64,000 nt of DNA from IMGVR_UViG_3300028364_000014:124001-188000, one strand, 5' to 3'. Positions 2,930-49,199 are shown, counted from the stretch's first letter. Notes: generated from the sequence alone by a model not told the origin. Numbers and translations are program-made.

Positions 2930-4816
2930 ATGTGTGGAATTCTTGGAGCACTTCGTTTCGGAGAACTTAATGATTCAACCAACGAAGAACATAATTGGAT
3001 GAGAAAAGCTAGTTTGCTAATTGCAGCTGATATTCTAGAAAAAACTGAAAAAAGAGGAAAAGATGCTACTGGAATATCGGCTCTTTTTAATGATGGAAGA
3101 TTTATTTTACAAAAAATGGGTACAGACGCTAAAACCTTTATGAGTCGCTTTGGTGGTAAAAAGGAAGATTTTCAAGGGTTTATGAAAATTCTTCGTGAAT
3201 ATGAGTCAACTCTAAAGATTATTACTGGACATTGCCGTAAAAAATCAGTAGGAGGTTCTTTTGACAATGTTAATAATCATCCAGTTAAAGCTAATAAAAT
3301 AGTTGGACTACATAATGGTACTCTAAAAAATCAAAACATCATTTTTGAAAATCTTAAATGTAAAAGAGACGGGGATGTAGACAGTGAAGCTATTTTTAGG
3401 CTTCTGGATTATTATACTAAAGGAGGAAAGGAACCTTTTACTATGGAAATGGTAGAAGATACTTTTAATAGGCTAGAAGGTACTTTTAGTATTATTGCTT
3501 ACAATATTGATAATCCTAATCAAGTAGTAGTTGGTCGTGACGGTAGACCAGCCGAATTTTGTCTTGTTAAACCACTAAAGACAGTATTTATTGCTTCAGA
3601 AAAAGCTTATATTGAACACGCTCTTTGGAGATATAATCAAACAGCAGCTTTATTTTATGATGGGCAGTATCCTAGAATTAAATCAGCAGACGCAGTGTTT
3701 AAAACACTAATAGATGATACTGCTGGTATTTTTGATCTTACAAAAGAAATTGATGAAAATTCTGAAATGGCGGATTTACTAGACACTAAAAAATTACCTC
3801 TAACAAGTCAAAGAATATGGAAAGTGCCTGTTAAATCGACTGTTTATCCTAATGATGCTTACAGAAATAGACAACAAACTGATGACAAAAAAAAAGTAAC
3901 AGTGGGTGGTCAGGGGGAACCCCTAAACACTGCAGCATCAGACAAAAGTATGACAGGAACTACCAAAACCAAGGATGCTGCGGAATCTAAAAGAAGATTT
4001 GTAGCAAGAGTATGGAATGAGGATTTAAATAAATTTATTCCAAAAACAGATATCAAAGCCATGGAAAGCACACAAGTAATTAATTTGGAAAAAAAAACCA
4101 TCAATGATTTAACATCAGTATTTAGAGAGGTTACAAAAGAACAAAATGATCCTTTTAATAAATCAGAACAAAACGCATTGGTGGAAAAGAAATTCACACA
4201 CGAGGTTGAAGAGTATAAAAGTGGAAAAACAGCTGTACTAAATAACATTATACCTATAGAGGCTAAAGCTTTAGAGGTCGAAGTAAACCAATTAAAAGTG
4301 ATTAAAGAAAAGACAGCTTCAGCACGTTTAGAAAGTAAAGATCATCTAGACGGGCTAAAGGCTACTATTCAAGCATCCAAAGAATTACTAAGATTGGACA
4401 CTATTGATGAAGTAGCTGAATTACTAAATGCGGATGTAGAAAATATTGAAAAACTATCATTACCTGCAATTACAAACAGACTCTTGAAAGCCCAATTTTC
4501 TAAAATGTTTCTTACTGGCTGGATGGCTAAATGTGATGCATTAAAAACACAAACAATCGATAAGCATATAGAAGCAATCGATAAACACGTGGAAGAAGAA
4601 AAAGAGGTGAAATCTAGAAAACATATCAGAGTATTAAAACATATTGTAAACGCGCTCGGCCAGTACGATGAAAAACAATTAGTTTCTGAATGGGCCAAAA
4701 AATGGGCTACTTCCTATTCTGAAATCAATACAGAGACTCTATCCGCGGTGTTTAATGAGGGAGACCTTCGTGATAATGACAAAGTTACTGAAATAATGAA
4801 ATACGTAAAAAAGTAA
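2930..4816 (+). CDS. Class II glutamine amidotransferase with long C-terminal extension
   Basis: MCGILG start, RGKDATG, GHCRKKS, NNHP, GLHNG, DSE and RDGRP motifs; about 330 extra C-terminal residues. Confidence 0.9.
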   Translation: MCGILGALRFGELNDSTNEEHNWMRKASLLIAADILEKTEKRGKDATGISALFNDGRFILQKMGTDAKTFMSRFGGKKEDFQGFMKILREYESTLKIITGHCRKKSVGGSFDNVNNHPVKANKIVGLHNGTLKNQNIIFENLKCKRDGDVDSEAIFRLLDYYTKGGKEPFTMEMVEDTFNRLEGTFSIIAYNIDNPNQVVVGRDGRPAEFCLVKPLKTVFIASEKAYIEHALWRYNQTAALFYDGQYPRIKSADAVFKTLIDDTAGIFDLTKEIDENSEMADLLDTKKLPLTSQRIWKVPVKSTVYPNDAYRNRQQTDDKKKVTVGGQGEPLNTAASDKSMTGTTKTKDAAESKRRFVARVWNEDLNKFIPKTDIKAMESTQVINLEKKTINDLTSVFREVTKEQNDPFNKSEQNALVEKKFTHEVEEYKSGKTAVLNNIIPIEAKALEVEVNQLKVIKEKTASARLESKDHLDGLKATIQASKELLRLDTIDEVAELLNADVENIEKLSLPAITNRLLKAQFSKMFLTGWMAKCDALKTQTIDKHIEAIDKHVEEEKEVKSRKHIRVLKHIVNALGQYDEKQLVSEWAKKWATSYSEINTETLSAVFNEGDLRDNDKVTEIMKYVKK

Positions 4817-4834
4817 CAAAGGAGAAATATTAAC

Positions 4835-6130
4835 ATGACTAGTAAAAAAGAACTAATTTTGGTAACTTCGGCTAGAATGGAAAAAAATAAAAAACCTAAC
4901 CGTAATGAAAATAACCTTATAAGATTATCTGCAGTTACTAGAAATAGTTTGGGCTTTGGAGACAGTGTTGAAGTCTCAGGAAAACATTTAAAGTCTTTAG
5001 ACACTTTTCAAGCTTTTTCTAAGGACATAAAAGATTTACGTGAACAGGGCTCATTTACAGATAGTGAAATGAAAAGAATTGGCTTCGTAACCCCTGAAAC
5101 TTTTCGAAGTCTTACTGGTAAAAACAGTCTATTGGAAAAAAATAATATTTGGATTTCCAAAACAATACAAACAACACTAATTGGTGCAGACCCAGAATTT
5201 CTTTTATTTGATAATAAAGGGGACGTAGTGCATGCAAATAACCACCTTTCTAAACCTGGACTAGTAGGATCAGATGGCGCTATGATTGAAGTACGCCCTG
5301 AACCTTCAACTACTCCTGAAGGGTTGGTTCAAAATATAAAATATATTTTTTCTAATCAAGAATTAATGCGTGATGTCCAAGATTTCCAGTGGTTAGCTGC
5401 AGTTTACTATAAAAATGATCAAAGAGACTACCCAGTTGGTGGACATATCCATCTTGGAAATCCTGTAAGCATCAAAAAGCTTTCTGGTCCTCAAAAACAT
5501 TTTATGTTTGGTGTTTTTAATAAAATACTTGACGAATTACTTTCCTTACCTATGATTAAATTGGATGGGCAAGACTTGGGTGAGTGTCGTAGATCAAAAT
5601 GTAAAATGGCTATGGGAAACCGGGGTTTTGGCTATTACGGAGAATGGCGTCCATGTGATGGAAGATTAGAACATCGCACATTAAGCGGTTTATGGCTTAT
5701 GCACCCTTCAGTAGCGGAGGCTGTATTAGGTACTGCCAAAGCCATAGCAGATGAAATGTTTAGTCTTGTGGATGATAAAGGGTATGATTTAAACTATATT
5801 AAAAGTCCTGGTATTGAATTTAATGATCATAAGTATTTATATAGGGCTGAGTTTGATGATTGGGACAAAATAGGCATTGCTAAAGATTTAAGATGTGTTC
5901 AATCCTCTGCTTATATGCGTTCTATGCTTAATACCTCTAAAGCAAGTAGTATTACCAAACCATTTCTTACTAAATGGTATAATAATATAAAAAAACTTAG
6001 TACTTATAACAAATACGCAAAGCACATTGACATGCTTTATGCTATTCTATCAATGCCCAAAAAGAAAATCTCTAGCATAGGGCTAGATTTAAAGAAAAAT
6101 TGGGTAGAAGAAAATGAACTTTTGTTGTAG
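4835..6130 (+). CDS. phiEco32-like COOH-NH2 ligase type 2
   Basis: IGADPEFLL, GSDGAMIEVRPEP, GGHIHLG and LEHRTLS motifs typical of this family. Confidence 0.85.
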   Translation: MTSKKELILVTSARMEKNKKPNRNENNLIRLSAVTRNSLGFGDSVEVSGKHLKSLDTFQAFSKDIKDLREQGSFTDSEMKRIGFVTPETFRSLTGKNSLLEKNNIWISKTIQTTLIGADPEFLLFDNKGDVVHANNHLSKPGLVGSDGAMIEVRPEPSTTPEGLVQNIKYIFSNQELMRDVQDFQWLAAVYYKNDQRDYPVGGHIHLGNPVSIKKLSGPQKHFMFGVFNKILDELLSLPMIKLDGQDLGECRRSKCKMAMGNRGFGYYGEWRPCDGRLEHRTLSGLWLMHPSVAEAVLGTAKAIADEMFSLVDDKGYDLNYIKSPGIEFNDHKYLYRAEFDDWDKIGIAKDLRCVQSSAYMRSMLNTSKASSITKPFLTKWYNNIKKLSTYNKYAKHIDMLYAILSMPKKKISSIGLDLKKNWVEENELLL

Positions 6131-6138
6131 AATCAGCA

Positions 6139-7296
6139 ATGTTTAAAAAAATTTTAAATTATATTAAAAAAGGACTTGACATGAATAAAAAAGATGTTTA
6201 TATTACGTACAGTAGTGCCACAAATGTAACTGGAGAAAAATTACAAGCAGCTTTAAAAATTGCAGGTGGTTTAAAAATTCCTTCAAAAAAACAAAAACTA
6301 ATTATTGGGTGGGGAGCTAAAACAGACGAAGACGTAACTTTTCCAAAAGATACTATTGTATTAAACCATCCAAACGCCATCAGGACTAACCGCAATAAAC
6401 TTGGGGCTCTCGCACTTATGCTTGCTGGGGATGTATCAATAGCCCCATTTTCACCAACTGAAACAGTAGAAACTGATATTGCTAGTGGAAAAATTACACT
6501 ACCGCTTATTGGAAGAACAAAATATCATCAAGGTGGTAAAGGGTTTTGGGTATGCCCTACACTTACACATGTTAAGGACGCTATCAAAAACAATGCTGCT
6601 TATTTTCAGGCAATGATTGAGATTAAAGACGAATTCAGGTTTCATGTTTTTGGAGATACTGTAATTTATGCTGTAAAAAAAGTTCAACGAACTCCAGAAG
6701 ATTTTGAAGTAGCATTTATAGAAGATGAGCTTGCACGTCAGAAAAAATTGTGGGAAAAGAATAATGAGGGACCATTTCAAGAGAATTTTGCAAAAGAAAT
6801 ACTACGTAGACAAGCAAAAAATGCTACGGCTGGGGGTGCTAATATGATGGTACGCTCCAATAAAATGGGGTGGAGATTCTCTAGAATTAGTAAGCTAGAT
6901 AAAGCAGTTGAAGTTGAAGCTATAAAAGCTGTAAGAGCACTAGGTCTAGATTTTGGTGCCGTTGATTGTTGTACTGATGCTAATGGAGTTCCTTTTATTA
7001 TTGAAGTAAATACTGGACCTGGGCTTGAGGGCACACCATTTGATAATTATGTAAAAGCTTTTGAAGCTTTACTAGCAGATAAACCAAAAGCTATTCCTAC
7101 CAAACCTATATCTCCAGCTGCAAACATGGCTGCTGCAAAAACTAAAATTGGAAACTCTTCTATGGGTGCTGCTAAAAAAGCACTACTTCAGCAACAGCTC
7201 GGGAGACTTTCTAGTATTCTAGAAGAGACCCCTGATGATGAAATCGACACTTTGGAACGACTGGCAAAACACGTTATATTCGGTTCCGACTCATAA
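6139..7296 (+). CDS. ATP-grasp peptide ligase (RimK/YheCD-like)
   Basis: RTKYHQGGKG, EFRFHV and LGLDFGAVD...IIEVNTGPG ATP-grasp motifs. The true start may be the ATG at 6181. Confidence 0.85.
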   Translation: MFKKILNYIKKGLDMNKKDVYITYSSATNVTGEKLQAALKIAGGLKIPSKKQKLIIGWGAKTDEDVTFPKDTIVLNHPNAIRTNRNKLGALALMLAGDVSIAPFSPTETVETDIASGKITLPLIGRTKYHQGGKGFWVCPTLTHVKDAIKNNAAYFQAMIEIKDEFRFHVFGDTVIYAVKKVQRTPEDFEVAFIEDELARQKKLWEKNNEGPFQENFAKEILRRQAKNATAGGANMMVRSNKMGWRFSRISKLDKAVEVEAIKAVRALGLDFGAVDCCTDANGVPFIIEVNTGPGLEGTPFDNYVKAFEALLADKPKAIPTKPISPAANMAAAKTKIGNSSMGAAKKALLQQQLGRLSSILEETPDDEIDTLERLAKHVIFGSDS

Positions 7297-10467: not shown

Positions 10468-11859
10468 ATGAGAACATTAGAAGCTTTATGTAAACTTAAT
10501 GATACAAAGGCTGAGGTGTATCTTGTTGGGGGCTTCGTTAGAGATTTCATAAGAAGAAAGAAAAATAAAGACCTAGATATAGTAGTACGCTATATGGCAT
10601 TGTCTCAAATTTCTGACTTTTTAAGTACACACGGTAAAGTAAAAGAATTAATAATACATCGTAATCATGGACCAAAAGCTGACCCAATTAAATTTTTGTC
10701 TTTTTTCGGAAGTGATGGTGTAGAAGCTCAAATTACAACTGTGAAGGGTTCCGGTGAAGATCGAAACCCAAATGCGACGCTAAAACAAGACGGAAAACAT
10801 AGAGATTTTACAATAAATTCAATGTATCTTCCTGTTAATAATATAACATCAAAAGCAGTTATTGATCATTTTGGTGGAAAAAACGATATTGCTGCAAAAC
10901 AAGTCTTAACCGTAGGATCAGCAAAAGCAAAATTTGTAAAATCTCCAATTCGTATATTACGAGCATTTTCCATAGCCGCTCGAACAGGCTACAACATACA
11001 TGATCATGTTAAAGTAGCCATAAGTGCAAATGTACATCTATTAGCCGGAGTGCCTATGGAGGCTATTAGGGCTGAATTTGAGGACATACTTTTAAGTGCT
11101 AAACCATCAAAATATTTTAAAATGATGCAAAAACTTGGGGTATTAAAAATGATACTTCCAGAGCTAGAAGCTACTGTAGACTGCAAACAAGACAAAAGAT
11201 ACCATAAATACAACGTATTTGAACACTTGTTATACTCATGTGATAATATCGAGCCAGATTTAATTTTACGTTTAGCAGCAATTCTACATGATATTGGAAA
11301 GCCTGCTTCACGAAATAAAATTAATAATCACGTTACCTTCTATAAACATGAGGTTTATGGGGCTAGACTAGCTCGCGTTATACTTAAACGATTAAGGTAC
11401 GACAAGGTAACTATCAACAAAGTAACTCATTTAGTAAGAATGCATATGTACCACTATACCAGAGAATTTACTGATGCAGCTGTACGTAGATTCATTGTAA
11501 ATGCAGGTATTACTAAAGATAATATAGAAAATTTGGCGGATCTTCCATTATTTAAAGTAAGAGCAGCAGAACGGCTTGGAAATGGGTTTAAGAAAACCAA
11601 AAAAACCCAAAAGCAGTATGATTATGAGGATAGAATTAAATCAGTGTTTGAATCTAGTGCTGGATTCTCTATAAATGATTTAGCTATTGACGGTAATGAC
11701 CTAATGGACACTTTTAGTATGCCTCCTGGTAGAAATATCGGAGAACTTTTAAAGTATTTACTTAGTCTTGTAATGAGTACACCGGATATTAATAATAAAA
11801 AAGATCTTCTTAGGGCATCACTTGAATTTATTATAAATGAAAAAGAAAAACATGAATAA
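10468..11859 (+). CDS. cca: CCA tRNA nucleotidyltransferase with HD domain
   Basis: YLVGGFVRD, DLDIVV, RDFTINSM and IRILRAF motifs, plus H..HDIGK and HM HD-domain residues. Confidence 0.9.
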   Translation: MRTLEALCKLNDTKAEVYLVGGFVRDFIRRKKNKDLDIVVRYMALSQISDFLSTHGKVKELIIHRNHGPKADPIKFLSFFGSDGVEAQITTVKGSGEDRNPNATLKQDGKHRDFTINSMYLPVNNITSKAVIDHFGGKNDIAAKQVLTVGSAKAKFVKSPIRILRAFSIAARTGYNIHDHVKVAISANVHLLAGVPMEAIRAEFEDILLSAKPSKYFKMMQKLGVLKMILPELEATVDCKQDKRYHKYNVFEHLLYSCDNIEPDLILRLAAILHDIGKPASRNKINNHVTFYKHEVYGARLARVILKRLRYDKVTINKVTHLVRMHMYHYTREFTDAAVRRFIVNAGITKDNIENLADLPLFKVRAAERLGNGFKKTKKTQKQYDYEDRIKSVFESSAGFSINDLAIDGNDLMDTFSMPPGRNIGELLKYLLSLVMSTPDINNKKDLLRASLEFIINEKEKHE

Positions 11860-11960
11860 TGAGCATTCAAAAAATATTAAAAACGATAAAAATATCAGAA
11901 AAAACTTCAATAGCTATTGATGTGATTCTTAGTAAGATTAGAGATGGTATTTTTGAAGAT

Positions 11961-12443
11961 GGGAGGTAGGAGTTTGACGATCATTGTAACGCTTGTTACA
12001 GTGTTTATATAGAGTAAATATGAAAACTCTGTGGTTCCAGGCTATCAACAAGTAGGGTTCCGAAAAGGAATTGCAAACGTGTTCGCCTATAGTAACTAAA
12101 CATTAAAGCATATACCAGGAATTGATGCGGTATCAGCTAATGTAACTGATTAGGGAAATAACTTTTAGGGGTTTTAGTTGACACATCCTCTTGACAGCAA
12201 AAATTCAACTCCGATCTTTTTATTAGAAGCTCATCTGCAATAATAAAATAATACATTAGCACATATACGAAGTAAAGTTCAAATCTTACTAATGTTTGAG
12301 AATTTCATGTTTTCTTGATAAAGATAAACAGAGGTTAAATTAGAAATCTTTATCTAAAAGCACGGAGGGAAGTCCAAAGGGACGTTATTATATAGATGGG
12401 ATACCTCATTGATATAATAAGTGGTTCGAATCCACACCTCCGA
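11961..12443 (+). ncRNA. tmRNA-like RNA (atypical)
   Basis: 5' GGGAGGTAGGAGTTTGAC resembles a tmRNA 5' end. The 3' GTGG-TTCGAAT-CCAC T-arm is followed by ACCTCC, which pairs with GGAGGT. Internal GCA AAC GTG TTC GCC TAT AGT AAC TAA (12073-12099) would encode the tag ANVFAYSN. No G3:U70 pair. Confidence 0.55.
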
Positions 12444-12698
12444 TAAGGTACTTATAAATTATAAAATACGTTATATAAAAACTGAACAATCGCCGTTACA
12501 CTGCACAGACTATTATAGTCAATAAGTCAGTAAAAACCGCTACTTCTGTCACTGTATATAAAATTTTATAACTTGAATCTTAAGTTCGAGTGGGTTAGGG
12601 GTGGGAAATTATAAGTTATCTTAAAAGTGAGTACAATTGGTTTTGTATTTATTTCTCCTTGATTAAAGCAAAGAGTTGTCATGGGCTCTTTGCAAACA

Positions 12699-12766
12699 GT
12701 AAAGACTGACTTGTTTTGGGTTATCATACTGGATTAGTACTCCCTAAAACTATTACTTGTCTTTAC
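12699..12766 (+). ncRNA. Degenerate copy of the recurring CGAA/ACUU stem-loop motif
   Basis: gtaaagac/gtctttac stem with TTATC and ACTT elements; TGAC replaces CGAA. Confidence 0.45.
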
Positions 12767-12874
12767 ATAAGCTAAATACAAGCTTATTTTCTCCTTAAAT
12801 TGTATAGTAAGGTAATTGGGTTGGCTAATTACCTTACATAAGTAACTTAAACCTTTAATAGTTGAGGAATTCGT

Positions 12875-13307: not shown

Positions 13308-14075
13308 ATGAAGAACTTATCAATGATTGGTAGACCTGGTTCTAAATCCGTAAAAAATATAGTTAAAATTACTGGAATTCCAAAATACAGGAAGACTGCT
13401 AAAGTTCTTATTAATTATGGGTTGGCTGGTAAAAAAATGGAACAGTTTATTAGAAACTTCCCATCAGCTAGAGGAAAATATTTTATCAACCAGTATGTTG
13501 GATGTTCAAAATATAAAGCGGTGAAGGAAGCTGAAAAGCAAAAAATCAAAGTTCCAAAAACCTATATGGTACTTCCAAATTTTGTAGAAAGTTCTAACTT
13601 TCTTACCAAAAGATTACATTCCCAAGGTGGAATAGGTATTGCCAAAGTAATAGGTAAGACCAAAAAAAACAATGAGTATTTTCAAGAATTTATTAGTGAT
13701 CGTAGATATGAATTACGTGTTCATGCCTTCGCATGGATTCCCCAAGAAGAATGGGTTTTACAAAAACGTTTTGGGCTACCAAATGAAATTGCTTGGAATT
13801 TTCATAATGGTGGTAGATTTCAATCTATTAAAAGCACTAATGGTTATAATTTATTTAAAAAAGCTAAAGAAATTTCACAAAAGATTCTTAAAATACGAAA
13901 AATGGCATTTGGTGCTGTAGATTTAATAGTAAATTCTTCTGGGGAGATATATTTTATTGAAATTAATTCCGCTCCTGGGTTTACTGGATTAAGTCAACCA
14001 ATTTATGTAAACGCTTTTAATAAATTAAAATCTATGGCAGAAAATGATGTTTTGAAGTTGTGCAATAAAAGGTAA
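13308..14075 (+). CDS. Second ATP-grasp ligase (RimK-like)
   Basis: KRLHSQGGIG, YFQEFI...YELRVH and AFGAVDLI...YFIEINSAPG. Confidence 0.85.
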   Translation: MKNLSMIGRPGSKSVKNIVKITGIPKYRKTAKVLINYGLAGKKMEQFIRNFPSARGKYFINQYVGCSKYKAVKEAEKQKIKVPKTYMVLPNFVESSNFLTKRLHSQGGIGIAKVIGKTKKNNEYFQEFISDRRYELRVHAFAWIPQEEWVLQKRFGLPNEIAWNFHNGGRFQSIKSTNGYNLFKKAKEISQKILKIRKMAFGAVDLIVNSSGEIYFIEINSAPGFTGLSQPIYVNAFNKLKSMAENDVLKLCNKR

Positions 14076-15140: not shown

Positions 15141-15180
15141 GGGAGCTAAGATTATATTACAATTTTAGCTCCCATTTTTT
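15141..15180 (+). terminator. Intrinsic terminator
   Basis: GGGAGCTAA...TTAGCTCCC hairpin followed by a T-tract. Confidence 0.7.
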
Positions 15181-15325: not shown

Positions 15326-15402
15326 GGCTAATTAACTCAATAGGTAGAGTATAAGGTTTAAAAAAAATCTTAATGTTTCTGGTTCAAATCCAGAATTAGC
15401 CA
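15326..15402 (+). tRNA. tRNA-like gene/pseudo-tRNA with an 11-nt A-rich anticodon loop
   Basis: GGCTAAT/ATTAGCC acceptor, D-arm and GGTTCAAATCC T-arm are intact; loop reads TTTAAAAAAAA. Confidence 0.6.
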
Positions 15403-15443
15403 CAATATAATAATAAACTTATCTTTAATTATGGAATTAAATT

Positions 15444-16067
15444 ATGAGAATAGACGAAAAAGGGTTTTTAGTTTTTGACGTCGAAACTTCTGGACTTTAT
15501 AATAACGATTATCCAGCATATGACAAACAACAAGCTTGGATTGTTCAATTTGCTGGGCAAATTCTTGATAACAACTTAAAACTAGTAAGAGAAATTTCTT
15601 TATTACTTAAACCACCTTTTCCTGATGCAGTAATAGAAGAGAAAGCCGAAGAAACACACGGTATATCTCTGGCTGAGTGTTGGAAAGATGGAGTAAGTCC
15701 AGGAAAAGTACGATTATTTCTTAAACCGGTATTTGAAGGTAAATTAAGACTAGTAGGACATAACGTCAATTTTGATAGTAAGTTCTTACATAGATTTACT
15801 GCCAACAAAGCTGAAAGAGCGCAATTAATTGAAGCCTTCAAACAAGGTATTTGTACTATGCGTTCTGGTACTAGTATATGTAAATTACCACCAACTAAGG
15901 CAATGCTTAAGTATAAAAATCTTAAGTATAAAAATCCAAAACTAGAAGAGTTACATGAGTTCTTATTCAATGAGAAATTTGTTGGTGCCCATGATGCTCT
16001 CAATGATGTTAAAGCCACAGTACGTTGCCTACGTGAGATGATAAAAAGGGGTGCGATAAGGCTTTAG
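15444..16067 (+). CDS. DEDDh 3'-5' exonuclease (DnaQ-like)
   Basis: FDVETSG, GHNVNFD and HDALNDV. Confidence 0.9.
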   Translation: MRIDEKGFLVFDVETSGLYNNDYPAYDKQQAWIVQFAGQILDNNLKLVREISLLLKPPFPDAVIEEKAEETHGISLAECWKDGVSPGKVRLFLKPVFEGKLRLVGHNVNFDSKFLHRFTANKAERAQLIEAFKQGICTMRSGTSICKLPPTKAMLKYKNLKYKNPKLEELHEFLFNEKFVGAHDALNDVKATVRCLREMIKRGAIRL

Positions 16068-16222: not shown

Positions 16223-16284
16223 AGTAGAAGCTCTCCTATCGTGGTCGGACTCTTCTTTAGAGTTCAGAAATAAAATTGAATAAT

Positions 16285-16362
16285 GTCCGTATAGCTCAAT
16301 CTGAATAGAGCAATGACCTTCTAAGTCGTAGATTTTCGGAGGTTCGAATCCTCCTGCGGATA
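16285..16362 (+). tRNA. tRNA-Arg(TCT)
   Basis: Full cloverleaf; anticodon loop CTTCTAA. Confidence 0.9.
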
Positions 16363-16374
16363 CAAGGAAAAATC

Positions 16375-16599
16375 ATGAAAGAATACAAATTAGATTTACA
16401 TGGTGTTAGACATGTAAATGCTAGGCAATTAGTAATCTCTCTCATAGAAAAGTATTGGAATGTACAAGCAGAGTTAAAAATTATCACCGGTAACAGTTTG
16501 AAAATGAAAGGTATAGTTATAAAAGTAATTAAAGAATATGATCTACCTTATCAAGTAAGTGAAATGTGCAGGGGATTTTTAATTACTTGGACGGGATAA
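16375..16599 (+). CDS. Stand-alone Smr-domain protein
   Basis: LDLHG and IITG motifs in 74 aa. Confidence 0.65.
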   Translation: MKEYKLDLHGVRHVNARQLVISLIEKYWNVQAELKIITGNSLKMKGIVIKVIKEYDLPYQVSEMCRGFLITWTG

Positions 16600-16612
16600 A
16601 GGAACTTATACA

Positions 16613-17278
16613 ATGAACAGACCAATAATTGATTATAATACAACGGATGTTAGAATAATAAAACATAACGCATTACGTGCAGCCCTTAGAGGTGATGATG
16701 CTATGATGAATTGCACTACTTACATTGATACACATGCTGGACCCGGATGCCATAACAACTGTCCAGGTTCTCCGATGATTGCAAGTGACCATTTTAATGA
16801 ATTATTTTTATATGAAAATAATCCCGAAGATTTTAATAAATTAAAAAGAAACATGAAAGCTGGTTGTATTCTTAGAGAAGCCGATGGGTTTAAGTCGTAT
16901 TGCTATTCTGATAAGAAAACGTTCGTTTTCATGGACCCTCCATTCAAATCTATTAGAGATTATTTTAAAGTAGCAAACTATTTGCAGACTGTCCCTGGGA
17001 TAGGTGCTCTTATGCTTATGTATCCTGTTAGTGCCTTTTTTCCTATTGAAGATTTTCATTGTATGTTACAAAGACAAATAGGGGGTGTAAATTTCTTAAT
17101 AAAAAAAGCAAGAGTATCTGAAACGAAATATTATTGTATGTTTTCTTCAGATGTTTCGGTAATACCGGCATGGAAAGACATCCTTGATCATTCTAGTTTA
17201 ATTGACACTTATAGTATGCAAAATCATATTGGGGATTATTTATTTAAAAAAAGGAAACAAAATCAAAGTGGATACTAA
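16613..17278 (+). CDS. RlmJ-like adenine-N6 methyltransferase
   Basis: DVRIIKH...YIDTHAGPG, FMDPPF..RDY and LMYPV parallel the RlmJ motifs DVLKH, YLDTHAGAG, IDPPYE..DY and LWYPV. Confidence 0.7.
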   Translation: MNRPIIDYNTTDVRIIKHNALRAALRGDDAMMNCTTYIDTHAGPGCHNNCPGSPMIASDHFNELFLYENNPEDFNKLKRNMKAGCILREADGFKSYCYSDKKTFVFMDPPFKSIRDYFKVANYLQTVPGIGALMLMYPVSAFFPIEDFHCMLQRQIGGVNFLIKKARVSETKYYCMFSSDVSVIPAWKDILDHSSLIDTYSMQNHIGDYLFKKRKQNQSGY

Positions 17279-17861: not shown

Positions 17862-17924
17862 CAAGGACCGAAGCATCTGGTTCATCCTTTTAAGATAATA
17901 CACCAGAAGCACCACTTGTCCTTG
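17862..17924 (+). ncRNA. Recurring CGAA/ACUU motif, copy 2 of a tandem pair, abutting tRNA-Thr
   Basis: caaggac-CGAA-gcatctgg-TTCATC...ccagaagc-ACC-ACTT-gtccttg. Confidence 0.7.
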
Positions 17925-17928
17925 TTAT

Positions 17929-18000
17929 GCCTATATAGCTGAGATGGTTTAGCACAGCCCTTGTAAGGCTGAGACGTGGGATCGTGACCTACTATAGGCT
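17929..18000 (+). tRNA. tRNA-Thr(TGT)
   Basis: GCCTATA/TATAGGC acceptor; CAGCC-CTTGTAA-GGCTG anticodon arm; atypical T-loop ATCGTGA. Confidence 0.85.
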
Positions 18001-18032
18001 CAAATATTAAATTTAAAAAAAGGAATTAACTT

Positions 18033-19661: not shown

Positions 19662-19736
19662 GCAGAAGTAATTCAATTGGTAGAAAATTATCCACCAAGA
19701 TAATAAATGCAAGTTCAATCCTTGTCTTCTGCTCCA
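19662..19736 (+). tRNA. tRNA-Gly-like RNA with a 6-nt anticodon loop (CACCAA) and encoded CCA
   Basis: GCAGAAG/CTTCTGC acceptor, U73, CCA; TTATC-CACCAA-GATAA. Confidence 0.7.
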
Positions 19737-19866: not shown

Positions 19867-19937
19867 GCGAGTATAGTTCACTTTGGTAGAGCAATAGCCT
19901 TCCAAGCTATGTGCCAAGGTTCGACTCCTACTTCCCA
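19867..19937 (+). pseudogene. Degenerate tRNA-Gly(TCC)
   Basis: D and anticodon arms intact (ATAGC-CTTCCAA-GCTAT); the T-stem and 3' acceptor strand do not pair. Confidence 0.6.
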
Positions 19938-19981
19938 CACACGCCCCCCTAATCCAGGCAAACGACTATAAAGGAATTATT

Positions 19982-21628: not shown

Positions 21629-21762
21629 GAAGATTGTAGCTCAACTGGTTAGAGCGGCTGACCCAAAAATCTTTTTGCATCCACTTGTCACCCATCTATG
21701 ACCGAAGTAAAAAGTTTATCATACTTCAGCGAGTTGAGGGTTCAAATCCCTCCAATCTTCCA
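21629..21762 (+). ncRNA. tRNA scaffold with a 64-nt structured insert in the anticodon loop
   Basis: AAGATTG/CAATCTT acceptor, canonical D and T arms, and a GCTGA/TCAGC stem enclosing 21662-21725; G-1:C73. Confidence 0.75.
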
Positions 21763-31158: not shown

Positions 31159-31233
31159 GCGGAAGTAATTCAATTGGTAGAAGCCTATCCTCCAAGATAG
31201 TTAATGCAAGTTCAATCCTTGCCTTCCGCTCCA
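31159..31233 (+). tRNA. tRNA-Gly-like RNA with a 6-nt anticodon loop (CTCCAA) and encoded CCA
   Basis: GCGGAAG/CTTCCGC acceptor, U73, CCA; paralog of 19662-19736. Confidence 0.75.
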
Positions 31234-31403: not shown

Positions 31404-32624
31404 ATGAAACTATTGAAACTATATAGTCAATTCTATATAAAAAAATTTATTAATCTTTTAAATACTGAAGCCATCCCTCTTGAAATTGTGGATTTATCTG
31501 GTAAGGTATATAAAACCGCGTCAAATAGCATTAGCCATAGGTTAATTATAAAAGATCCTAGATTTTTTAAATCTTTACATTCCCCTAATGCTTTATCTTT
31601 AGGTGAAGCCTACATTAAAGAATACTTTGACATTGAAGGGGATGTTAGAACGCTATATACCATGCTTCATGATAGAATATTGAATACTGAGCAAAAGAAA
31701 AATAAACTAACCTCTTTCATAAAATCTTTTGTGGATGTAAGACAAAAGGAAAAAGAAAATATTGAGTATCACTATGACGCTCCTAGTACTTTTTATAGAA
31801 TTTTTTTAGGGCGAACAATGGGCTATACGTGTGGTTATTATCCTGATCAAACCACCACAATGAGTGAAGCACAAGAAAGAAAAATGGATATCATCTGTAA
31901 AAAATTAAAATTGAAAAAAGGTGAGCATCTTCTAGATGTTGGGTGTGGTTGGGGTAATTTTGCAATTTATGCTGCTGAACACTATGGAGTTACTGTCACA
32001 GGTATTACTTTAAGTGAAGAACAAAAAATATATGCAGACAAATTAGTAGAGGCAAGTCAACTCAGTGTTTCAATTAAAATTATGAACTACCGTGACCTTC
32101 CGTTAAATTATTATGATAAAATATCATGTATTGGGATGTCAGAGCATGTAGGTCAAAAACATATGCAGGAATTTTTTAATACTATATATAAAACACTTAA
32201 ACAAGGCGGATTATTTCTACATCATAGTATCACAACTAATACTAAAAGACAAAAAGGATTAGAAAATTCTTTTTTAAATAAATACATGTACCCTGGAGGG
32301 GAGTTAATGTTTGAGCACGATCTTGTTAAGTGTGCTGAAATAGCTAACTTTGAGTTACTAAATGCTGAGAACTTTAGACCTCATTATGTTACAACGTTGA
32401 ATGATTGGATAGATCGAATAGAGGATAGAAAGTCTGATATATTGAATGTTATTTCCGAACAAGTGTATAGAATATACCATACTTTTTTTATAGGGTCAGC
32501 AGCCTCATTCAAATTAAAAGAAATATCCTTATTTCAAAATCTTTTTTATAAGACTAGTGTATATGACACTGACAATTATTTTAATAGTATCTGTGACTAC
32601 TCCCCCTCTAAGCCGAAGCTATAG
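31404..32624 (+). CDS. cfa: Cyclopropane-fatty-acyl-phospholipid synthase (C-terminus replaced by IS end)
   Basis: IEYHYD, MGYTCGYY, LLDVGCGWG, GITLSEEQ, GMSEHVG, KYMYPGG and HYVTTL..W. Confidence 0.9.
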   Translation: MKLLKLYSQFYIKKFINLLNTEAIPLEIVDLSGKVYKTASNSISHRLIIKDPRFFKSLHSPNALSLGEAYIKEYFDIEGDVRTLYTMLHDRILNTEQKKNKLTSFIKSFVDVRQKEKENIEYHYDAPSTFYRIFLGRTMGYTCGYYPDQTTTMSEAQERKMDIICKKLKLKKGEHLLDVGCGWGNFAIYAAEHYGVTVTGITLSEEQKIYADKLVEASQLSVSIKIMNYRDLPLNYYDKISCIGMSEHVGQKHMQEFFNTIYKTLKQGGLFLHHSITTNTKRQKGLENSFLNKYMYPGGELMFEHDLVKCAEIANFELLNAENFRPHYVTTLNDWIDRIEDRKSDILNVISEQVYRIYHTFFIGSAASFKLKEISLFQNLFYKTSVYDTDNYFNSICDYSPSKPKL

Positions 32625-33874
32625 AGGAGGCTTCTTGGGGGATTAACCCCTGAGACTGTAGCCCCAGTCTCAAAATATTTATGGCAGCATTATGGTCTCT
32701 ATTTAGTACTAAATTGCAGTGAGGACACCTGTGAATTCTGGTTGAAAGGGTCTTTTTTACGACCCGCCCGCAAGCTGGATTTGAGCACATTTGGGATGTA
32801 TATGCTGGATTTACTGGTATTAATTGTTTGCCTAAAATTGATGCTTTATATTGTAGAAAAAGTATGAACTTATTCCAGCTTGCGTCAGCGATAGATTTAT
32901 TTAAACCAGATTTTACCGACGCACCATTAGGTAAATATCCATCAGAATTAGGATCTTTTATTGGAGTAGCTCGCTTAACCATATTCTTTACGTCAAGTTT
33001 TTCATAAACTATAACATTGGAGATAGACAAGAGCTTGTTGGCTGTTTTATGGAGAAAATCATTACGTTGGCACTTTATTCTGTAATGACATTTCCTAATT
33101 GCTTTTAACAGCCTGTAGTATTTCTTTGTTCTTTTAGTAGTTTTTGATAACTTTCTTTGTAGATTAGCGAGACTTTTTTCATTAGCTCTAAAACTTTTTG
33201 GTGATTTTACAGAATTTCCATCTGAATCATAATAGAAATCATTTAAACCTAAATCTATTCCTAAAAAGGTAGTTGGATTCTGCTTAATCTCTACTTTAAG
33301 ATGATTCTCAAAGGAGAAGCAGACAAACCATTTACCAGCTTCTTTGGATATAGTTAAGGTTTTAATTGTTCCATTTTCTGGAATTTCTCTGTGGTATTTA
33401 ATCTTAATATTACCTATTTTGGAGATTTTTAGTATACCATCGACAGGACGTTCTTTAAACTGTGGGTAAGTAATGCTGCTCCAGTCTTTAAACTTTTTAA
33501 ACTTTGGAAAACCCGCCTTAGCTTCCCCAGATTTAATTCTTCTGAAGAAAGATTTATAGGCTGTGTCTAAACGTTTTAGTGTATTTTGAAGCACCTGTGA
33601 ATGTACTGAACCAAACCACGGACGTTCTTTCTTTAGAAAAGTAAGTTCATTGCTTTGTTCAAAAAGACTGATTGAAATACTGTGGTTTTCATAAAGCCAG
33701 ATTCTGTCCTCAAGAGCCCAGTTATACAAATACCTACACATGGAGAACTGATTCTCCAGGCGTGTGGTTTGAGCTTTAGTAGGATAAATTCTGTATTTAT
33801 GTGTAAGTAGCATTTCTCTCCATAAGTAAAATAATTAGTTTCTAATACATAATATATCACAGCATGTGATGTAT
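32593..33874 (-). mobile_element. IS200/IS605-family tnpB-only element (IS1341-like)
   Basis: The - strand right end has a subterminal hairpin ending in TCAC at 32593; left end adjoins TTGAC; rejoining the flanks restores an in-frame cfa C-terminus. No tnpA is present in the window. Confidence 0.8.
32608..33813 (-). CDS. tnpB: RNA-guided endonuclease TnpB
   Basis: HKYRIYPT HTH, GIDLG (RuvC-I), VYEKL (RuvC-II), TSQMCS..C zinc finger and RDHNAAINI (RuvC-III). Confidence 0.95.
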   Translation of the reverse strand: MLLTHKYRIYPTKAQTTRLENQFSMCRYLYNWALEDRIWLYENHSISISLFEQSNELTFLKKERPWFGSVHSQVLQNTLKRLDTAYKSFFRRIKSGEAKAGFPKFKKFKDWSSITYPQFKERPVDGILKISKIGNIKIKYHREIPENGTIKTLTISKEAGKWFVCFSFENHLKVEIKQNPTTFLGIDLGLNDFYYDSDGNSVKSPKSFRANEKSLANLQRKLSKTTKRTKKYYRLLKAIRKCHYRIKCQRNDFLHKTANKLLSISNVIVYEKLDVKNMVKRATPIKDPNSDGYLPNGASVKSGLNKSIADASWNKFILFLQYKASILGKQLIPVNPAYTSQMCSNPACGRVVKKTLSTRIHRCPHCNLVLNRDHNAAINILRLGLQSQGLIPQEASSIASA

Positions 33875-48319: not shown

Positions 48320-49159
48320 TTATTTAATACTCCTATTATATATTGCCAATAATTCAGTGACTTTTTTTCTTGAGTCACCATCAGCAGAAATAAATCTACT
48401 GACTTCTTTAGTTTCAATTCTATCCGCGTTCTTATAAAGCTCTCTGGTTACTTCATTGTCATGATTAGATATTAAAAATCGACACTTTGATTCCTCAGCT
48501 AATTTAACTAATAGTTTTTGTTGCTCCATATTAAAACCAGTAGCACTATAATCCGTAAATGCTGCTGTGTCTGACATAGGTACGTACGGAGGATCAGCAT
48601 AAATCACGTCGTTCTGGTTAGCTAGTGCTATTGTTTTCTCAAAGCTTTGATTATAAATATTAACATTATTCAATTTTTTAATTACTGTTTTAAATGCGTT
48701 CTCTGGAAAATTAACATTAGTGTATCTACCAAAAGGAACATTAAATTTACCAGACTTATTATATCTACATAACCCATTAAATCCATGACGATTTAAATAC
48801 ACAAAAAATGAAGCTCTTTTTACTATATCCTTAGTTTCATTAAATTGTTTTCTTATACTATAATATACTTCTTCTATATTATTTTCCTTCTTAAAAAGTA
48901 ATTTACATTCCTGTATAAAAGTTTCTCCATTTTCTTTTAATAAATTGTATATATTAGTTAAATCTTTATTAACATCACTGATTATATATTCTTTAAAATC
49001 CATATTCATAAATACAACACCAGAACCAACAAAGGGCTCAATAAAGCGCCCCGTTATTGTAGGAGAAAAATCCTCCCGATTATGTATATACCAATCTAAA
49101 AAATTTATACTCTGTGATTTTCCACCTGCCCATTTTAAAAACGATTTCGTTATTTTCAT
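48320..49159 (-). CDS. dam: DNA adenine methylase (D12 class)
   Basis: FLKWAGGK, FIEPFVGSG, YLNRHGFNGL.RYN..G.FNVPFG and YADPPY. Confidence 0.92.
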   Translation of the reverse strand: MKITKSFLKWAGGKSQSINFLDWYIHNREDFSPTITGRFIEPFVGSGVVFMNMDFKEYIISDVNKDLTNIYNLLKENGETFIQECKLLFKKENNIEEVYYSIRKQFNETKDIVKRASFFVYLNRHGFNGLCRYNKSGKFNVPFGRYTNVNFPENAFKTVIKKLNNVNIYNQSFEKTIALANQNDVIYADPPYVPMSDTAAFTDYSATGFNMEQQKLLVKLAEESKCRFLISNHDNEVTRELYKNADRIETKEVSRFISADGDSRKKVTELLAIYNRSIK

Positions 49160-49199
49160 ATTATTAATATAAACACTATTTATAATTTGTCAAGTTATT

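What the first reader, a model, noticed from the sequence alone, without database searches (positions are those of the whole stretch)
16613..17278. Phage RlmJ-like m6A methyltransferase inside the tRNA/ncRNA region
The motif order matches RlmJ (23S rRNA m6A2030 methyltransferase) rather than DNA methyltransferases. An rRNA methyltransferase homolog is unusual in a phage. It could act on host rRNA, on phage tRNAs or on the rRNA-mimic RNAs.
Basis: partly seen in the sequence, partly recalled or inferred. Interest (0 to 1): 0.6.

Follow-up and report, generated by a model that had tools for sequence, protein, structure and literature searches.

The report
Stripped-down RlmJ-family methyltransferase in a phage
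A 238-kb uncultured phage carries, among its tRNA genes, a rare and well-conserved cut-down relative of the bacterial ribosomal-RNA methylase RlmJ; it keeps the methyl-transfer machinery but has lost the parts RlmJ uses to recognise its ribosomal target, so it probably methylates something else, most likely another RNA.

Summary
The ORF at 16613..17278 (+, 221 aa) is real and belongs to the RlmJ/PF04378 family. Evidence: Pfam 27.1 bits (cut-off 27), phmmer E=4e-11 to cellular family members, RlmJ structures at Z 19-20 against Z<=12.5 for every other methyltransferase, and an independent ESM Atlas model (TM 0.74). DNA methyltransferases are not the closest fold.

It is not an ordinary RlmJ. All cofactor-binding residues and the catalytic K17/D108-P-P-F are kept. 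The 52-residue helical subdomain is reduced to 5 residues (43-82 in all 88 cellular homologues). Y4, H6, D15 and W195, invariant in the family and (except D15, not tested) required for E. coli activity, are replaced in all three phage copies.

The gene is under purifying selection (dN/dS about 0.11) and matches the phage in composition. No relative was found in 50,697 phage genomes, PHROGs or IMG/VR.

Synteny tRNA-Arg(UCU) / methyltransferase / 61-aa ORF / tRNA-Thr(UGU) is conserved. The phage also has a CCA-adding enzyme, an RNase T-like exonuclease, RtcB, an RNA ligase and three conventional DNA methyltransferases.

Best reading: an active, retargeted RNA N-methyltransferase, substrate unproven. 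No rRNA-like RNA was found nearby.

The parts
16613..17278 (+). Gene for the 221-aa minimal RlmJ-family (PF04378) methyltransferase, stop codon included
   Evidence: ORF. Pfam 27.1 bits against GA 27. RlmJ PDB chains are the only phmmer hits. Fold Z 19-20 to RlmJ/LPL1258. dN/dS about 0.11 against the 67%-identical ortholog.
16600..16603 (+). AGGA ribosome-binding site, 9 nt before the ATG
   Evidence: Read directly from the sequence.
16619..16666 (+). Rewired N-terminal 'motif X' (codons 3-18). K17-H18 are kept. The RlmJ positions Y4, H6, F8, H9, N12 and D15 are R3, I5, D7, Y8, T11 and R14.
   Evidence: Column mapping against E. coli RlmJ and 88 cellular homologues. Roles of these residues come from PMC3814359 and PMC9178011.
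16727..16747 (+). Motif I, D39-T-H-A-G-P-G45 (SAM adenine/methionine pocket, H41 = RlmJ H42)
   Evidence: Invariant columns in the 90-sequence alignment.
16748..16762 (+). Five-residue linker (codons 46-50) at the site where RlmJ carries its 52-residue helical subdomain (E. coli residues 47-98)
   Evidence: Insert length is 5 aa in the three phage proteins and 43-82 aa in all 88 cellular members. The model shows only a short beta-hairpin here.
16763..16774 (+). P51-G-S-P54 (S53 = RlmJ S100, contacts the methionine moiety of SAM)
16814..16816 (+). E68 (= RlmJ E118, binds the SAM ribose)
   Evidence: Invariant in 88/88 cellular members and kept in the phage proteins. Role.
16883..16891 (+). D91-G-F93 (= RlmJ D143-G144-F145, bind the SAM adenine)
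16934..16945 (+). Catalytic motif IV, D108-P-P-F111 (RlmJ D164-PPY). It reads D-P-Q-F in the 67%-identical ortholog.
   Evidence: The second position is S in 25 of 88 cellular members, so it is tolerant.
17018..17020 (+). M136 at the position of RlmJ W195, the base-stacking residue (W in 88/88 cellular members)
   Evidence: The W195A mutation abolishes E. coli RlmJ activity (PMC9178011).
17268..17453 (+). Conserved 61-aa ORF (GTG start) that overlaps the methyltransferase stop. It abuts the stop in both other lineages.
   Evidence: 64% identity between lineages. Gene order. No family match.
16375..16599 (+). 74-aa ORF with a weak Smr-domain match (DLHG motif), immediately upstream. Absent from the 67%-identical lineage.
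   Evidence: Pfam PF01713 16.1 bits, below GA 25.7. Gene tables.
16285..16363 (+). tRNA-Arg(UCU), the upstream flank conserved in both lineages
17929..18001 (+). tRNA-Thr(UGU), the downstream flank conserved in both lineages
15444..16067 (+). DEDDh (RNase T / DnaQ-like) 3'-5' exonuclease, conserved neighbour
   Evidence: Pfam PF00929 36.4 bits and phrog_192 E=6e-27. Present in L002 and L003.
10468..11859 (+). CCA-adding enzyme (tRNA nucleotidyltransferase with HD domain), 4.7 kb upstream
   Evidence: Pfam PF01743, PF12627, PF13735 and PF01966.
15141..15173 (+). Strong terminator-like hairpin (13-bp stem plus T-run) that probably closes the preceding transcription unit
   Evidence: consensus scan only.
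17865..17883 (+). Weak terminator-like hairpin after the 86-aa ORF and before tRNA-Thr
   Evidence: consensus scan only; the count is not above shuffles.

Best explanation
The gene encodes a phage-specific minimal derivative of the RlmJ methyltransferase family. Shown: it has the RlmJ variant of the class-I SAM-methyltransferase fold. It has an intact cofactor pocket: H18, DTHAGxG, S53, E68 and DGF. It has the catalytic pair that activates an exocyclic amino group: K17 and D108 of the D-P-P-F motif. It is basic and is maintained by purifying selection. Also shown: it has lost every element that RlmJ adds for recognising helix 72/A2030 of 23S rRNA. These are the 52-residue helical subdomain, the Y4-H6-D15 network of the N-terminal lid, and the stacking tryptophan W195. 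Inferred: it is an active SAM-dependent N-methyltransferase, most likely making m6A (m2G cannot be excluded). Its target is a nucleic acid, most likely RNA, and is not recognised the way RlmJ recognises A2030. My best guess for the target is a tRNA or another small structured RNA handled by the phage's tRNA-maintenance set (about 19 tRNAs, CCA-adding enzyme, RNase T-like exonuclease, RtcB, RNA ligase), with which it is probably co-transcribed. The methyl mark would tune decoding or shield the RNA from host nucleases.
For: Family and fold: PF04378 27.1 bits. RlmJ chains are the only PDB sequence hits. phmmer E=3.9e-11 and 1.3e-9 to cellular PF04378 proteins. Foldseek places 14 RlmJ/LPL1258 chains at E about 1e-9 and the next tier at E about 1e-5. 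VIA-align gives Z 19.7 and 19.0 over 205 residues against Z<=12.5 for all others. The ESM Atlas single-sequence model matches RlmJ clusters at TM 0.74. Active-site retention: K17, H18, H41, S53, E68, D91-G-F, D108-P-P-F, Y117 and P138 are all conserved. Their roles are described in PMC3814359 and PMC9178011. Retargeting: the helical subdomain is reduced to 5 aa against 43-82 aa in 88/88 homologues. Y4, H6, D15 and W195 are invariant in 84-88 of 88 homologues, but the phage copies have R, I/M, R/K and M there, and these replacements recur in all three copies. Selection: pN 0.19 against pS 0.69, dN/dS about 0.11. GC and GC3 equal the phage genome. pI is 8.4-9.3. RNA context: synteny tRNA-Arg(UCU)/gene/61-aa ORF/tRNA-Thr(UGU) holds in two lineages that are 67% identical. 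The CCA-adding enzyme and RNase T-like exonuclease are nearby. RtcB and an RNA ligase lie elsewhere in the genome. The phage already has three conventional DNA methyltransferases. E. coli RlmJ does not act on ssDNA, and a small hairpin is a sufficient substrate.
Against: No direct evidence for any substrate exists. The tRNA link is guilt by association inside a mixed accessory region that also holds a cyclopropane-fatty-acid-synthase-like gene, a hydrolase and a TnpB. In E. coli RlmJ the single mutants Y4A, H6D and W195A are inactive, so the phage protein could be catalytically dead. The Pfam score sits exactly at the cut-off. The AF2 model was built from an alignment dominated by RlmJ sequences, and its last 60 residues or so are of low confidence. 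RlmJ's active site is closer to DNA m6A methyltransferases than to other RNA methyltransferases, so a DNA target is chemically possible. No expression data could be obtained.
Confidence: 0.45

Rival explanations
1. It is a true functional RlmJ. It makes m6A2030 in host 23S rRNA so that ribosomes carry the mark during infection, for example in a host that lacks or down-regulates RlmJ.
For: The closest family by sequence and structure is RlmJ. Catalytic K/D and the SAM pocket are intact. A host lacking rlmF and rlmJ supports T5 infection less well (PMC11619597), so rRNA m6A can matter to a phage.
Against: The helical subdomain, Y4, H6, D15 and W195 are invariant in cellular RlmJ. Y4, H6 and W195 are individually essential for helix-72 methylation, and all five features are lost here. 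RlmJ acts early in 50S assembly, a process of limited use to a lytic phage. The phage clade sits on a stem of about 3 substitutions per site.
Confidence: 0.15
2. It is a DNA adenine-N6 (or cytosine-N4) methyltransferase that protects phage DNA from restriction. Loss of the helical subdomain would have opened the cleft for duplex DNA.
For: Motif IV D-P-P-F is shared with DNA m6A enzymes, and RlmJ's active site resembles T4 Dam and M.TaqI. Orphan DNA methyltransferases are common in phages. The ESM Atlas feature search that excluded PF04378 listed a viral D12-class cluster among its weak leads (score 0.79, below the reliable range).
Against: No Pfam, PHROG or PADLOC DNA-methyltransferase match. 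The nearest DNA methyltransferase, DpnM, is only on the generic plateau (Z 11.3, rank 29) against Z 19-20 for RlmJ. The phage already encodes two Dam-like enzymes and one N6_N4 enzyme elsewhere. No target-recognition domain is present. E. coli RlmJ is inactive on ssDNA.
Confidence: 0.12
3. It no longer transfers methyl groups to nucleic acid. It could be a SAM-binding or RNA-binding pseudo-enzyme, such as a SAM sensor or sink or an RNA chaperone, or it could methylate a protein or a small molecule.
For: Three residues whose single mutation kills E. coli RlmJ (Y4, H6, W195) are replaced. One ortholog has D-P-Q-F. The next structural tier includes protein-glutamine and small-molecule methyltransferases (Mtq2, HemK2, spermidine synthase).
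Against: Every cofactor contact plus K17, D108 and the aromatic residue of motif IV is kept under strong purifying selection, which a pseudo-enzyme would not need. The second motif-IV position is S in 25 of 88 bona fide family members. The protein is basic, with a KKRK-type tail.
Confidence: 0.18

Closest known systems
E. coli RlmJ (YhiR), 23S rRNA m6A2030 methyltransferase (PDB 4BLV, 6QE5, 7P8Q); Pfam PF04378
   Same: Same fold variant (Z 19.0, 205 residues aligned). Same order of motifs X, I, II, III, IV and VI. Identical SAM contacts (H19, H42, S100, E118, D143-G-F). Same catalytic K18/D164 pair. Similar N-terminal length and basic pI.
   Different: About 20% identity. The helical subdomain (residues 47-98) is replaced by 5 residues. 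Y4, H6, D15 and W195 are replaced, and F8, H9 and N12 are changed. It is 221 aa against 280 aa, with a different C-terminal tail. It is phage-borne, whereas RlmJ is a housekeeping gene mainly of Pseudomonadota.
Legionella pneumophila LPL1258 (PDB 2OO3), an RlmJ homologue
   Same: Best structural match (Z 19.7, rmsd 2.9 over 205 residues).
   Different: 267 aa with the helical subdomain. Only 18% identity.
Short divergent RlmJ proteins of Neptuniibacter and related Oceanospirillales (P0004, P0005, P0008; 251-258 aa)
   Same: Nearest sequences outside the phage clade (E=4e-11, 26-33% identity). They group with the phage clade in the tree (98% SH-aLRT), but with a long-branch warning.
   Different: They keep the helical subdomain (46-residue insert), Y4, H6, D15 and W195. 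In the Neptuniibacter MAG this protein is the only PF04378 match, so it is probably that organism's own RlmJ. They are acidic (pI about 5).
Other (D/N)PP(F/Y) RNA N-methyltransferases: RsmD/YhhF (16S m2G966, D-P-P-F), TrmM/TrmN6 (tRNA m6A37), METTL16
   Same: Class-I fold and the same motif-IV chemistry on exocyclic amines. They are compact enzymes without an inserted subdomain. They form the second tier of Foldseek hits (E about 1e-5), and there is a weak PF03602 match (E=0.11).
   Different: Much weaker similarity than to RlmJ. They lack RlmJ's N-terminal K-H lid and its C-terminal extension.
Phage orphan DNA adenine methyltransferases (Dam/D12 class, N6_N4 class)
   Same: SAM-dependent N6 chemistry and the D-P-P-aromatic motif. 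They are frequent in phages.
   Different: No family match for this protein. The phage's own Dam-like and N6_N4 genes are separate genes at window 48401-49787 (- strand) and genome 213390-214136.

Membership tests
RlmJ family (Pfam PF04378 RsmJ/RlmJ, formerly DUF519) | Score at or above the Pfam gathering threshold | tested here: met
   27.1 bits against GA 27, so barely. The orthologs P0001 and P0003 score 27.8 and 25.9 bits. The six-frame genome search gave 23.9 bits, below the cut-off. Independent support comes from phmmer E=3.9e-11 to cellular members.
RlmJ family (Pfam PF04378 RsmJ/RlmJ, formerly DUF519) | RlmJ-type variant of the class-I methyltransferase fold, closest to solved RlmJ structures | tested here: met
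   Z 19.7 (2OO3) and 19.0 (6QE5) against <=12.5 for all other chains. Foldseek E about 1e-9. The ESM Atlas's own model gives TM 0.74 to RlmJ clusters.
RlmJ family (Pfam PF04378 RsmJ/RlmJ, formerly DUF519) | SAM-binding residues H19, H42, S100, E118, D143-G144-F145 | tested here: met
   All are conserved, as H18, H41, S53, E68 and D91-G92-F93. Only L119 differs (N69).
RlmJ family (Pfam PF04378 RsmJ/RlmJ, formerly DUF519) | Catalytic K18 (motif X) and D164 of motif IV D-P-P-Y/F | tested here: met
   K17 and D108-P-P-F111 are present. One ortholog has D-P-Q-F.
RlmJ family (Pfam PF04378 RsmJ/RlmJ, formerly DUF519) | Helical subdomain inserted in the beta2-beta3 hairpin (E. coli residues 47-98), including E60 | tested here: not met
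   5 residues in the phage proteins against 43-82 in 88/88 cellular members. The subdomain is defined in PMC3814359.
RlmJ family (Pfam PF04378 RsmJ/RlmJ, formerly DUF519) | Strictly conserved N-terminal lid residues Y4, H6 and D15 (also H9 and N12) | tested here: not met
   They are R3, I/M5 and R/K14 (and Y8, T/I11), whereas 84 of 88 homologues have Y, H and D (the other 4 have gaps).
RlmJ family (Pfam PF04378 RsmJ/RlmJ, formerly DUF519) | Motif VI tryptophan W195 that stacks on the target adenine | tested here: not met
   M136 in all three phage proteins. W in 88/88 cellular members.
RlmJ orthologs (function: m6A2030 of 23S rRNA) | Methylates A2030 / the helix-72 hairpin | not testable with these tools
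   Needs an in-vitro assay or complementation of an rlmJ deletion.
DNA N6-adenine/N4-cytosine methyltransferases (PF02086 D12 class, PF01555 N6_N4, PF13651 and others) | Family profile match, or closest structural neighbours are DNA methyltransferases | tested here: not met
   No such Pfam, PHROG or PADLOC match at E<=10 or E<=1. DpnM scores Z 11.3 at rank 29. None appears in the Foldseek top 50.
TcmP (NCBIfam TIGR04474, three-Cys-motif partner protein) | Score above the curated cut-off | tested here: not met
   13.6 bits against a cut-off of 53, covering only the motif-I region.

The most novel reading that the evidence does not exclude
The phage has turned an rRNA methyltransferase scaffold into an RNA-level counterpart of anti-restriction DNA methylation. 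On this reading, the minimal enzyme N-methylates a base in the anticodon loop or another exposed loop of phage or host tRNAs, or of rRNA in mature ribosomes. That would make the RNA resistant to host tRNA- or rRNA-cleaving defence nucleases, and it would complement the phage's RtcB/RNA-ligase/CCA-enzyme repair set. The conserved 61-aa partner ORF might supply the missing specificity module.
Probability: 0.1. Interest if true: 0.8.

Novelty: new variant of a known kind. Interest (0 to 1): 0.5.

Why it matters
RNA-modifying enzymes encoded by phages are poorly documented. Current reviews assume that phage tRNAs are largely modified by host enzymes (PMC13191261). Here a phage keeps, under strong selection, a catalytic core taken from a ribosomal m6A methyltransferase and stripped of its target-recognition parts. 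This offers two things. First, it is a natural minimal RlmJ that can show what the helical subdomain and the N-terminal lid contribute to specificity. Second, it is a concrete candidate for phage-directed RNA methylation during infection, which can be tested with simple biochemistry. Host rRNA m6A is already known to influence infection by one phage, T5 (PMC11619597). The family is extremely rare: three sequences in collections of billions, and none found in cultured phages.

Tried and rejected
1. Complex prediction of the methyltransferase with the conserved 61-aa downstream protein gave no verdict (score 0.00, controls not run). It counts neither for nor against binding.

3. Relatives in phages:
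- megablast and tblastn against 50,697 phage records found none.
- A profile-pattern scan of IMG/VR found none.
- E. coli RlmJ against the phage records gave 5 hits, none a credible phage copy. Two are Salmonella chromosome contigs over 500 kb and one is an unannotated 3.4-kb fragment 92.5% identical to E. coli RlmJ. For one of the two 'Acinetobacter phage MD-2021a' records the neighbours were inspected and are mdh, miaB and slt.
- PHROGs has no family for RlmJ.

4. Origin of the phage clade: the quick maximum-likelihood tree puts it with the Neptuniibacter-type clade. However, it sits on a stem of about 3 substitutions per site and the tool warns of long-branch attraction, so I treat the donor as unresolved. 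The careful tree search did not finish.

5. Host or relatives through neighbouring genes: exonuclease and CCA-enzyme searches gave only hits of 34% identity or less, to unrelated phages. The single IMG/VR relative (L097) has neither tRNAs nor the methyltransferase.

6. 'rRNA-mimic RNAs': Rfam found nothing but tRNAs, both at gathering thresholds and at E<=1.

7. Defence-system membership: no PADLOC match for the gene or its small neighbours.

8. TcmP and phrog_24028 gave only sub-threshold partial matches, so I dismissed them.

9. Promoter-like sites are not enriched over shuffles (20 against 15.9 +/- 3.9), so I make no promoter claim.

10. The coordinates of the predicted model could not be read, so distances around the active site were not measured.

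Full report
**Provenance and observation**

The window is bases 124001-188000 of a 237,910-bp IMG/VR virus record estimated to be 87% complete. GC is 33%. No close cultured relative was found.

At 16613..17278 (+) there is an intact 221-codon ORF with an AGGA ribosome-binding site 9 nt upstream. It lies in a co-directional tRNA island. ARAGORN tRNAs and Rfam 18 between 15326 and 34222. tRNA-Arg(UCU) is 250 nt upstream and tRNA-Thr(UGU) 650 nt downstream.

**Family assignment**

- Pfam gives PF04378 (RlmJ) at 27.1 bits, exactly at the gathering cut-off of 27.
- The only PDB sequence hits are E. coli RlmJ chains.
- An exhaustive phmmer scan of 1.84 billion representatives found four proteins. 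One is the 98%-identical copy. The other three are cellular proteins (E=3.9e-11, 1.3e-9 and 1.1e-4) that themselves score 56-78 bits on PF04378.
- An AlphaFold2 model built on a 90-sequence alignment has mean pLDDT 73.7 and pTM 0.77. The core is above 85 and the last 60 residues or so are poor.
- Foldseek puts 14 RlmJ/LPL1258 chains first (E about 1e-9, TM 0.6-0.7). Spermidine synthase, RsmD, Bud23, TrmM and METTL16 follow at E about 1e-5.
- An all-against-representatives structural alignment gives Z 19.7 (2OO3) and 19.0 (E. coli RlmJ) over 205 residues. A flat plateau at Z<=12.5 lies below. The first DNA adenine methyltransferase, DpnM, is at rank 29 with Z 11.3.
- My model's alignment was dominated by RlmJ sequences, so an independent check matters. 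The ESM Atlas holds its own single-sequence model of this exact protein (pTM 0.74), and its nearest clusters are again RlmJ (TM 0.74).

**What is kept and what is lost**

I took E. coli RlmJ from the annotated K-12 record, added it to the family alignment and mapped the experimentally defined residues. The residue roles come from PMC3814359 and PMC9178011.

Kept:
- The SAM contacts H19, H42, S100, E118 and D143-G-F145 appear as H18, H41, S53, E68 and D91-G-F93.
- The catalytic K18 and D164 of D-P-P-Y appear as K17 and D108-P-P-F.
- Y173, P197 and M235 also have equivalents.

Lost:
- The helical subdomain (E. coli residues 47-98), whose position is unique to RlmJ among methyltransferases. The phage proteins have 5 residues there. 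All 88 cellular homologues have 43-82.
- The lid network Y4-H6-D15. The phage proteins have R3, I/M5 and R/K14, whereas all 84 homologues with a residue at these columns have Y, H and D (the other 4 have gaps).
- W195, which stacks on A2030. It is M136 in the phage proteins and W in 88/88 homologues.
- F8, H9 and N12 are also changed, to D7, Y8 and T/I11.

In E. coli, Y4A, H6D, K18A, D164A and W195A are each inactive. The phage enzyme thus keeps the chemistry and the cofactor site but not RlmJ's way of holding its substrate.

**Is it functional?**

Two phage lineages carry the gene. One is the window plus several contigs at 98% identity. The other is a 67%-identical copy in an NCBI metagenome assembly.

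- Between the lineages pN is 0.19 and pS is 0.69, giving dN/dS of about 0.11. dS is near saturation, so the ratio is approximate, but the direction is clear.
- The phage-specific replacements (R3, D7, Y8, M136) are identical in both lineages.
- GC and GC3 equal those of the genome, so the gene is an old resident.
- The protein is basic (pI 8.4-9.3) with a lysine/arginine-rich tail.
- One ortholog has D-P-Q-F. That position is S in 25 of 88 ordinary family members, so it is tolerant.

A decaying gene is excluded. A pseudo-enzyme that still needs a perfect SAM pocket and the catalytic pair seems unlikely but remains possible.

**Rarity**

- No relative was found in 50,697 phage records or in IMG/VR by a profile-pattern scan. 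PHROGs has no family that matches RlmJ.
- A search of the phage records with E. coli RlmJ returned five hits, none a credible phage copy. Two are Salmonella chromosome contigs over 500 kb and one is an unannotated 3.4-kb fragment 92.5% identical to E. coli RlmJ. For one of the two 'Acinetobacter phage MD-2021a' records I inspected the neighbours, which are mdh, miaB and slt.
- All cellular relatives found are Pseudomonadota, in line with the literature.
- A quick tree places the phage clade next to short divergent RlmJs of Neptuniibacter-type Oceanospirillales. However, it sits on a stem of about 3 substitutions per site and the tool warns of long-branch attraction. The donor is unresolved.
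- In the Neptuniibacter MAG that divergent protein is the only PF04378 match. It keeps the subdomain and the invariant residues, so it is probably an ordinary RlmJ.

**Context**

In both lineages the order is tRNA-Phe(AAA), DEDDh/RNase T-like exonuclease, small ORFs, tRNA-Arg(UCU), methyltransferase, a 61-aa ORF coupled to the methyltransferase stop codon, then tRNA-Thr(UGU). The 61-aa protein is 64% identical between lineages.

A strong terminator-like hairpin at 15141-15173 and a weak one at 17865-17883 bracket this block. Co-transcription of the tRNAs with the methyltransferase is therefore plausible, but it is only inferred.

Upstream lie a CCA-adding enzyme, two ATP-grasp proteins, a phiEco32-type COOH-NH2 ligase, a glutamine amidotransferase and a RuvB-like ATPase. 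Downstream lie a metallophosphoesterase, a weak radical-SAM match, an alpha/beta hydrolase, a cyclopropane-fatty-acid-synthase-like methyltransferase and a TnpB.

Elsewhere the genome encodes RtcB next to an Rnl2-type RNA ligase. It also encodes three conventional DNA methyltransferases: two Dam-like and one N6_N4. The phage thus invests heavily in tRNA supply and repair, and it already has ordinary DNA methylation.

**Interpretation**

- Shown: this is an RlmJ-family core with an intact cofactor and catalytic site. It lacks RlmJ's substrate-recognition additions. It is selected, rare and embedded among tRNA genes.
- Inferred: it is an active N-methyltransferase. Adenine N6 is most likely. N2 of guanine cannot be excluded, because the adenine-specific contacts have changed and D-P-P-F is also RsmD's motif.
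- Further inferred: it acts on RNA, but not on A2030 in the RlmJ manner. My best guess for the target is a tRNA or another small structured RNA. I give this composite reading a confidence of 0.45.
- Rivals: canonical m6A2030 (0.15), DNA methylation (0.12), and non-catalytic or non-nucleic-acid function (0.18). The remainder is unassigned.

The 'rRNA-mimic RNA' idea finds no support. Rfam at E<=1 over 11800-36000 shows tRNAs only.

**Limits**

- No expression data were obtained.
- The complex test with the 61-aa protein gave no verdict.
- The C-terminal third of the model is of low confidence.
- Only two independent lineages exist, so synteny evidence is thin.
- All translation used table 11. 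Nothing suggested another code.

Noticed in passing
window 15326-15403; also L002 297-377 and L003 4799-4876: A tRNA-Phe with anticodon AAA (A at the wobble position), 78 nt long, is conserved in both phage lineages. An unmodified A34 is unusual in bacteria. Rfam tRNA score is 59.4 bits.
   Followed up: no
window 21630-21760: Rfam matches the full tRNA model (50.7 bits) over 131 nt, but ARAGORN calls no gene here. It may be a tRNA with an intron or insert. Rfam-only tRNA matches also occur at 19662-19733 and 19867-19939.
   Followed up: no
window 31159-31233: ARAGORN reports a tRNA of undetermined identity with a two-base 'anticodon' (cc). Rfam gives it 48.4 bits as a tRNA. The loop may be abnormal.
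   Followed up: no
window about 16233-16317 versus L003 about 5705: A relative that is 99.7-100% identical in the flanking DNA (137.8-kb ENA contig) has a deletion of about 80 nt. It removes the 5' half of tRNA-Arg(UCU) and the sequence just upstream, so this tRNA is dispensable or polymorphic in the population.
   Followed up: partly
window 17264-17278: In the window the methyltransferase stop codon of its relatives (TAA) reads CAA. This extends the protein by 4 residues (221 against 217 aa) and makes it overlap the GTG start of the 61-aa ORF by 11 nt.
   Followed up: yes
window 16375-16599: A 74-aa ORF with a DLHG motif has a sub-threshold Smr-domain match (16.1 bits, GA 25.7). Smr domains are nucleic-acid nicking or RNA-cleaving modules. 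It is present in the window lineage but absent from the 67%-identical lineage, which has a YunG-like ORF instead.
   Followed up: partly
window 32608-33813 (- strand): A TnpB/IS605 OrfB-type gene (OrfB_IS605, Cas12f1-like TNB, HTH) sits on the opposite strand inside the tRNA island, between tRNA-Tyr and tRNA-Leu. Its 3' end overlaps the 3' end of the neighbouring gene.
   Followed up: no
window 31404-32624: A strong cyclopropane-fatty-acyl-phospholipid-synthase (CMAS) family match (278 bits) with an N-terminal DUF7884. This is an unusual auxiliary gene for a phage, and it sits within the tRNA island.
   Followed up: no
window 2930-7296 and 13308-14075: A cluster of a glutamine amidotransferase, a phiEco32-type COOH-NH2 ligase and two or three ATP-grasp proteins. 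This combination has been proposed to make peptide or base modifications in phages.
   Followed up: no
window 48401-49132 and 49230-49787 (- strand); genome 213390-214136: Two adjacent conventional DNA methyltransferases (Dam-like D12 class at 203 bits, N6_N4 class at 95 bits) and a third Dam-like gene outside the window.
   Followed up: partly
genome (G000:C1) 81950-82525 and 83262-84509, outside the window: An Rnl2-type RNA ligase (PF09414, 50 bits) lies next to an RtcB ligase. The RtcB match comes in two pieces, which may mean an insertion or an intein-like interruption in its 487-aa frame. Together they look like an RNA-repair pair.
   Followed up: no
window 11860-12874: About 1 kb after the CCA-adding enzyme has no ORF of 100 aa or more on the coding strand. 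Gene callers found nothing over most of the same stretch in the related contig L003 (its 1442-2348). Rfam found nothing there at E<=1.
   Followed up: no
protein P0002 (JGI 3.45-kb contig): A 231-aa copy is about 95% identical to the methyltransferase over the first 78% of it (about 175 residues) and then continues into an unrelated lysine/glutamate-rich C-terminus. This could be recombination or an assembly chimera. It is the only copy that a source names 'RlmJ'.
   Followed up: no
INPHARED records CAKLQH020000003.1 (inspected) and CAKLQF020000004.1 (L096): Contigs of about 240 kb labelled 'Acinetobacter phage MD-2021a' carry a canonical RlmJ. In the inspected record it sits among mdh, miaB, slt and RNase I, which looks like bacterial chromosome rather than phage.
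   Followed up: yes
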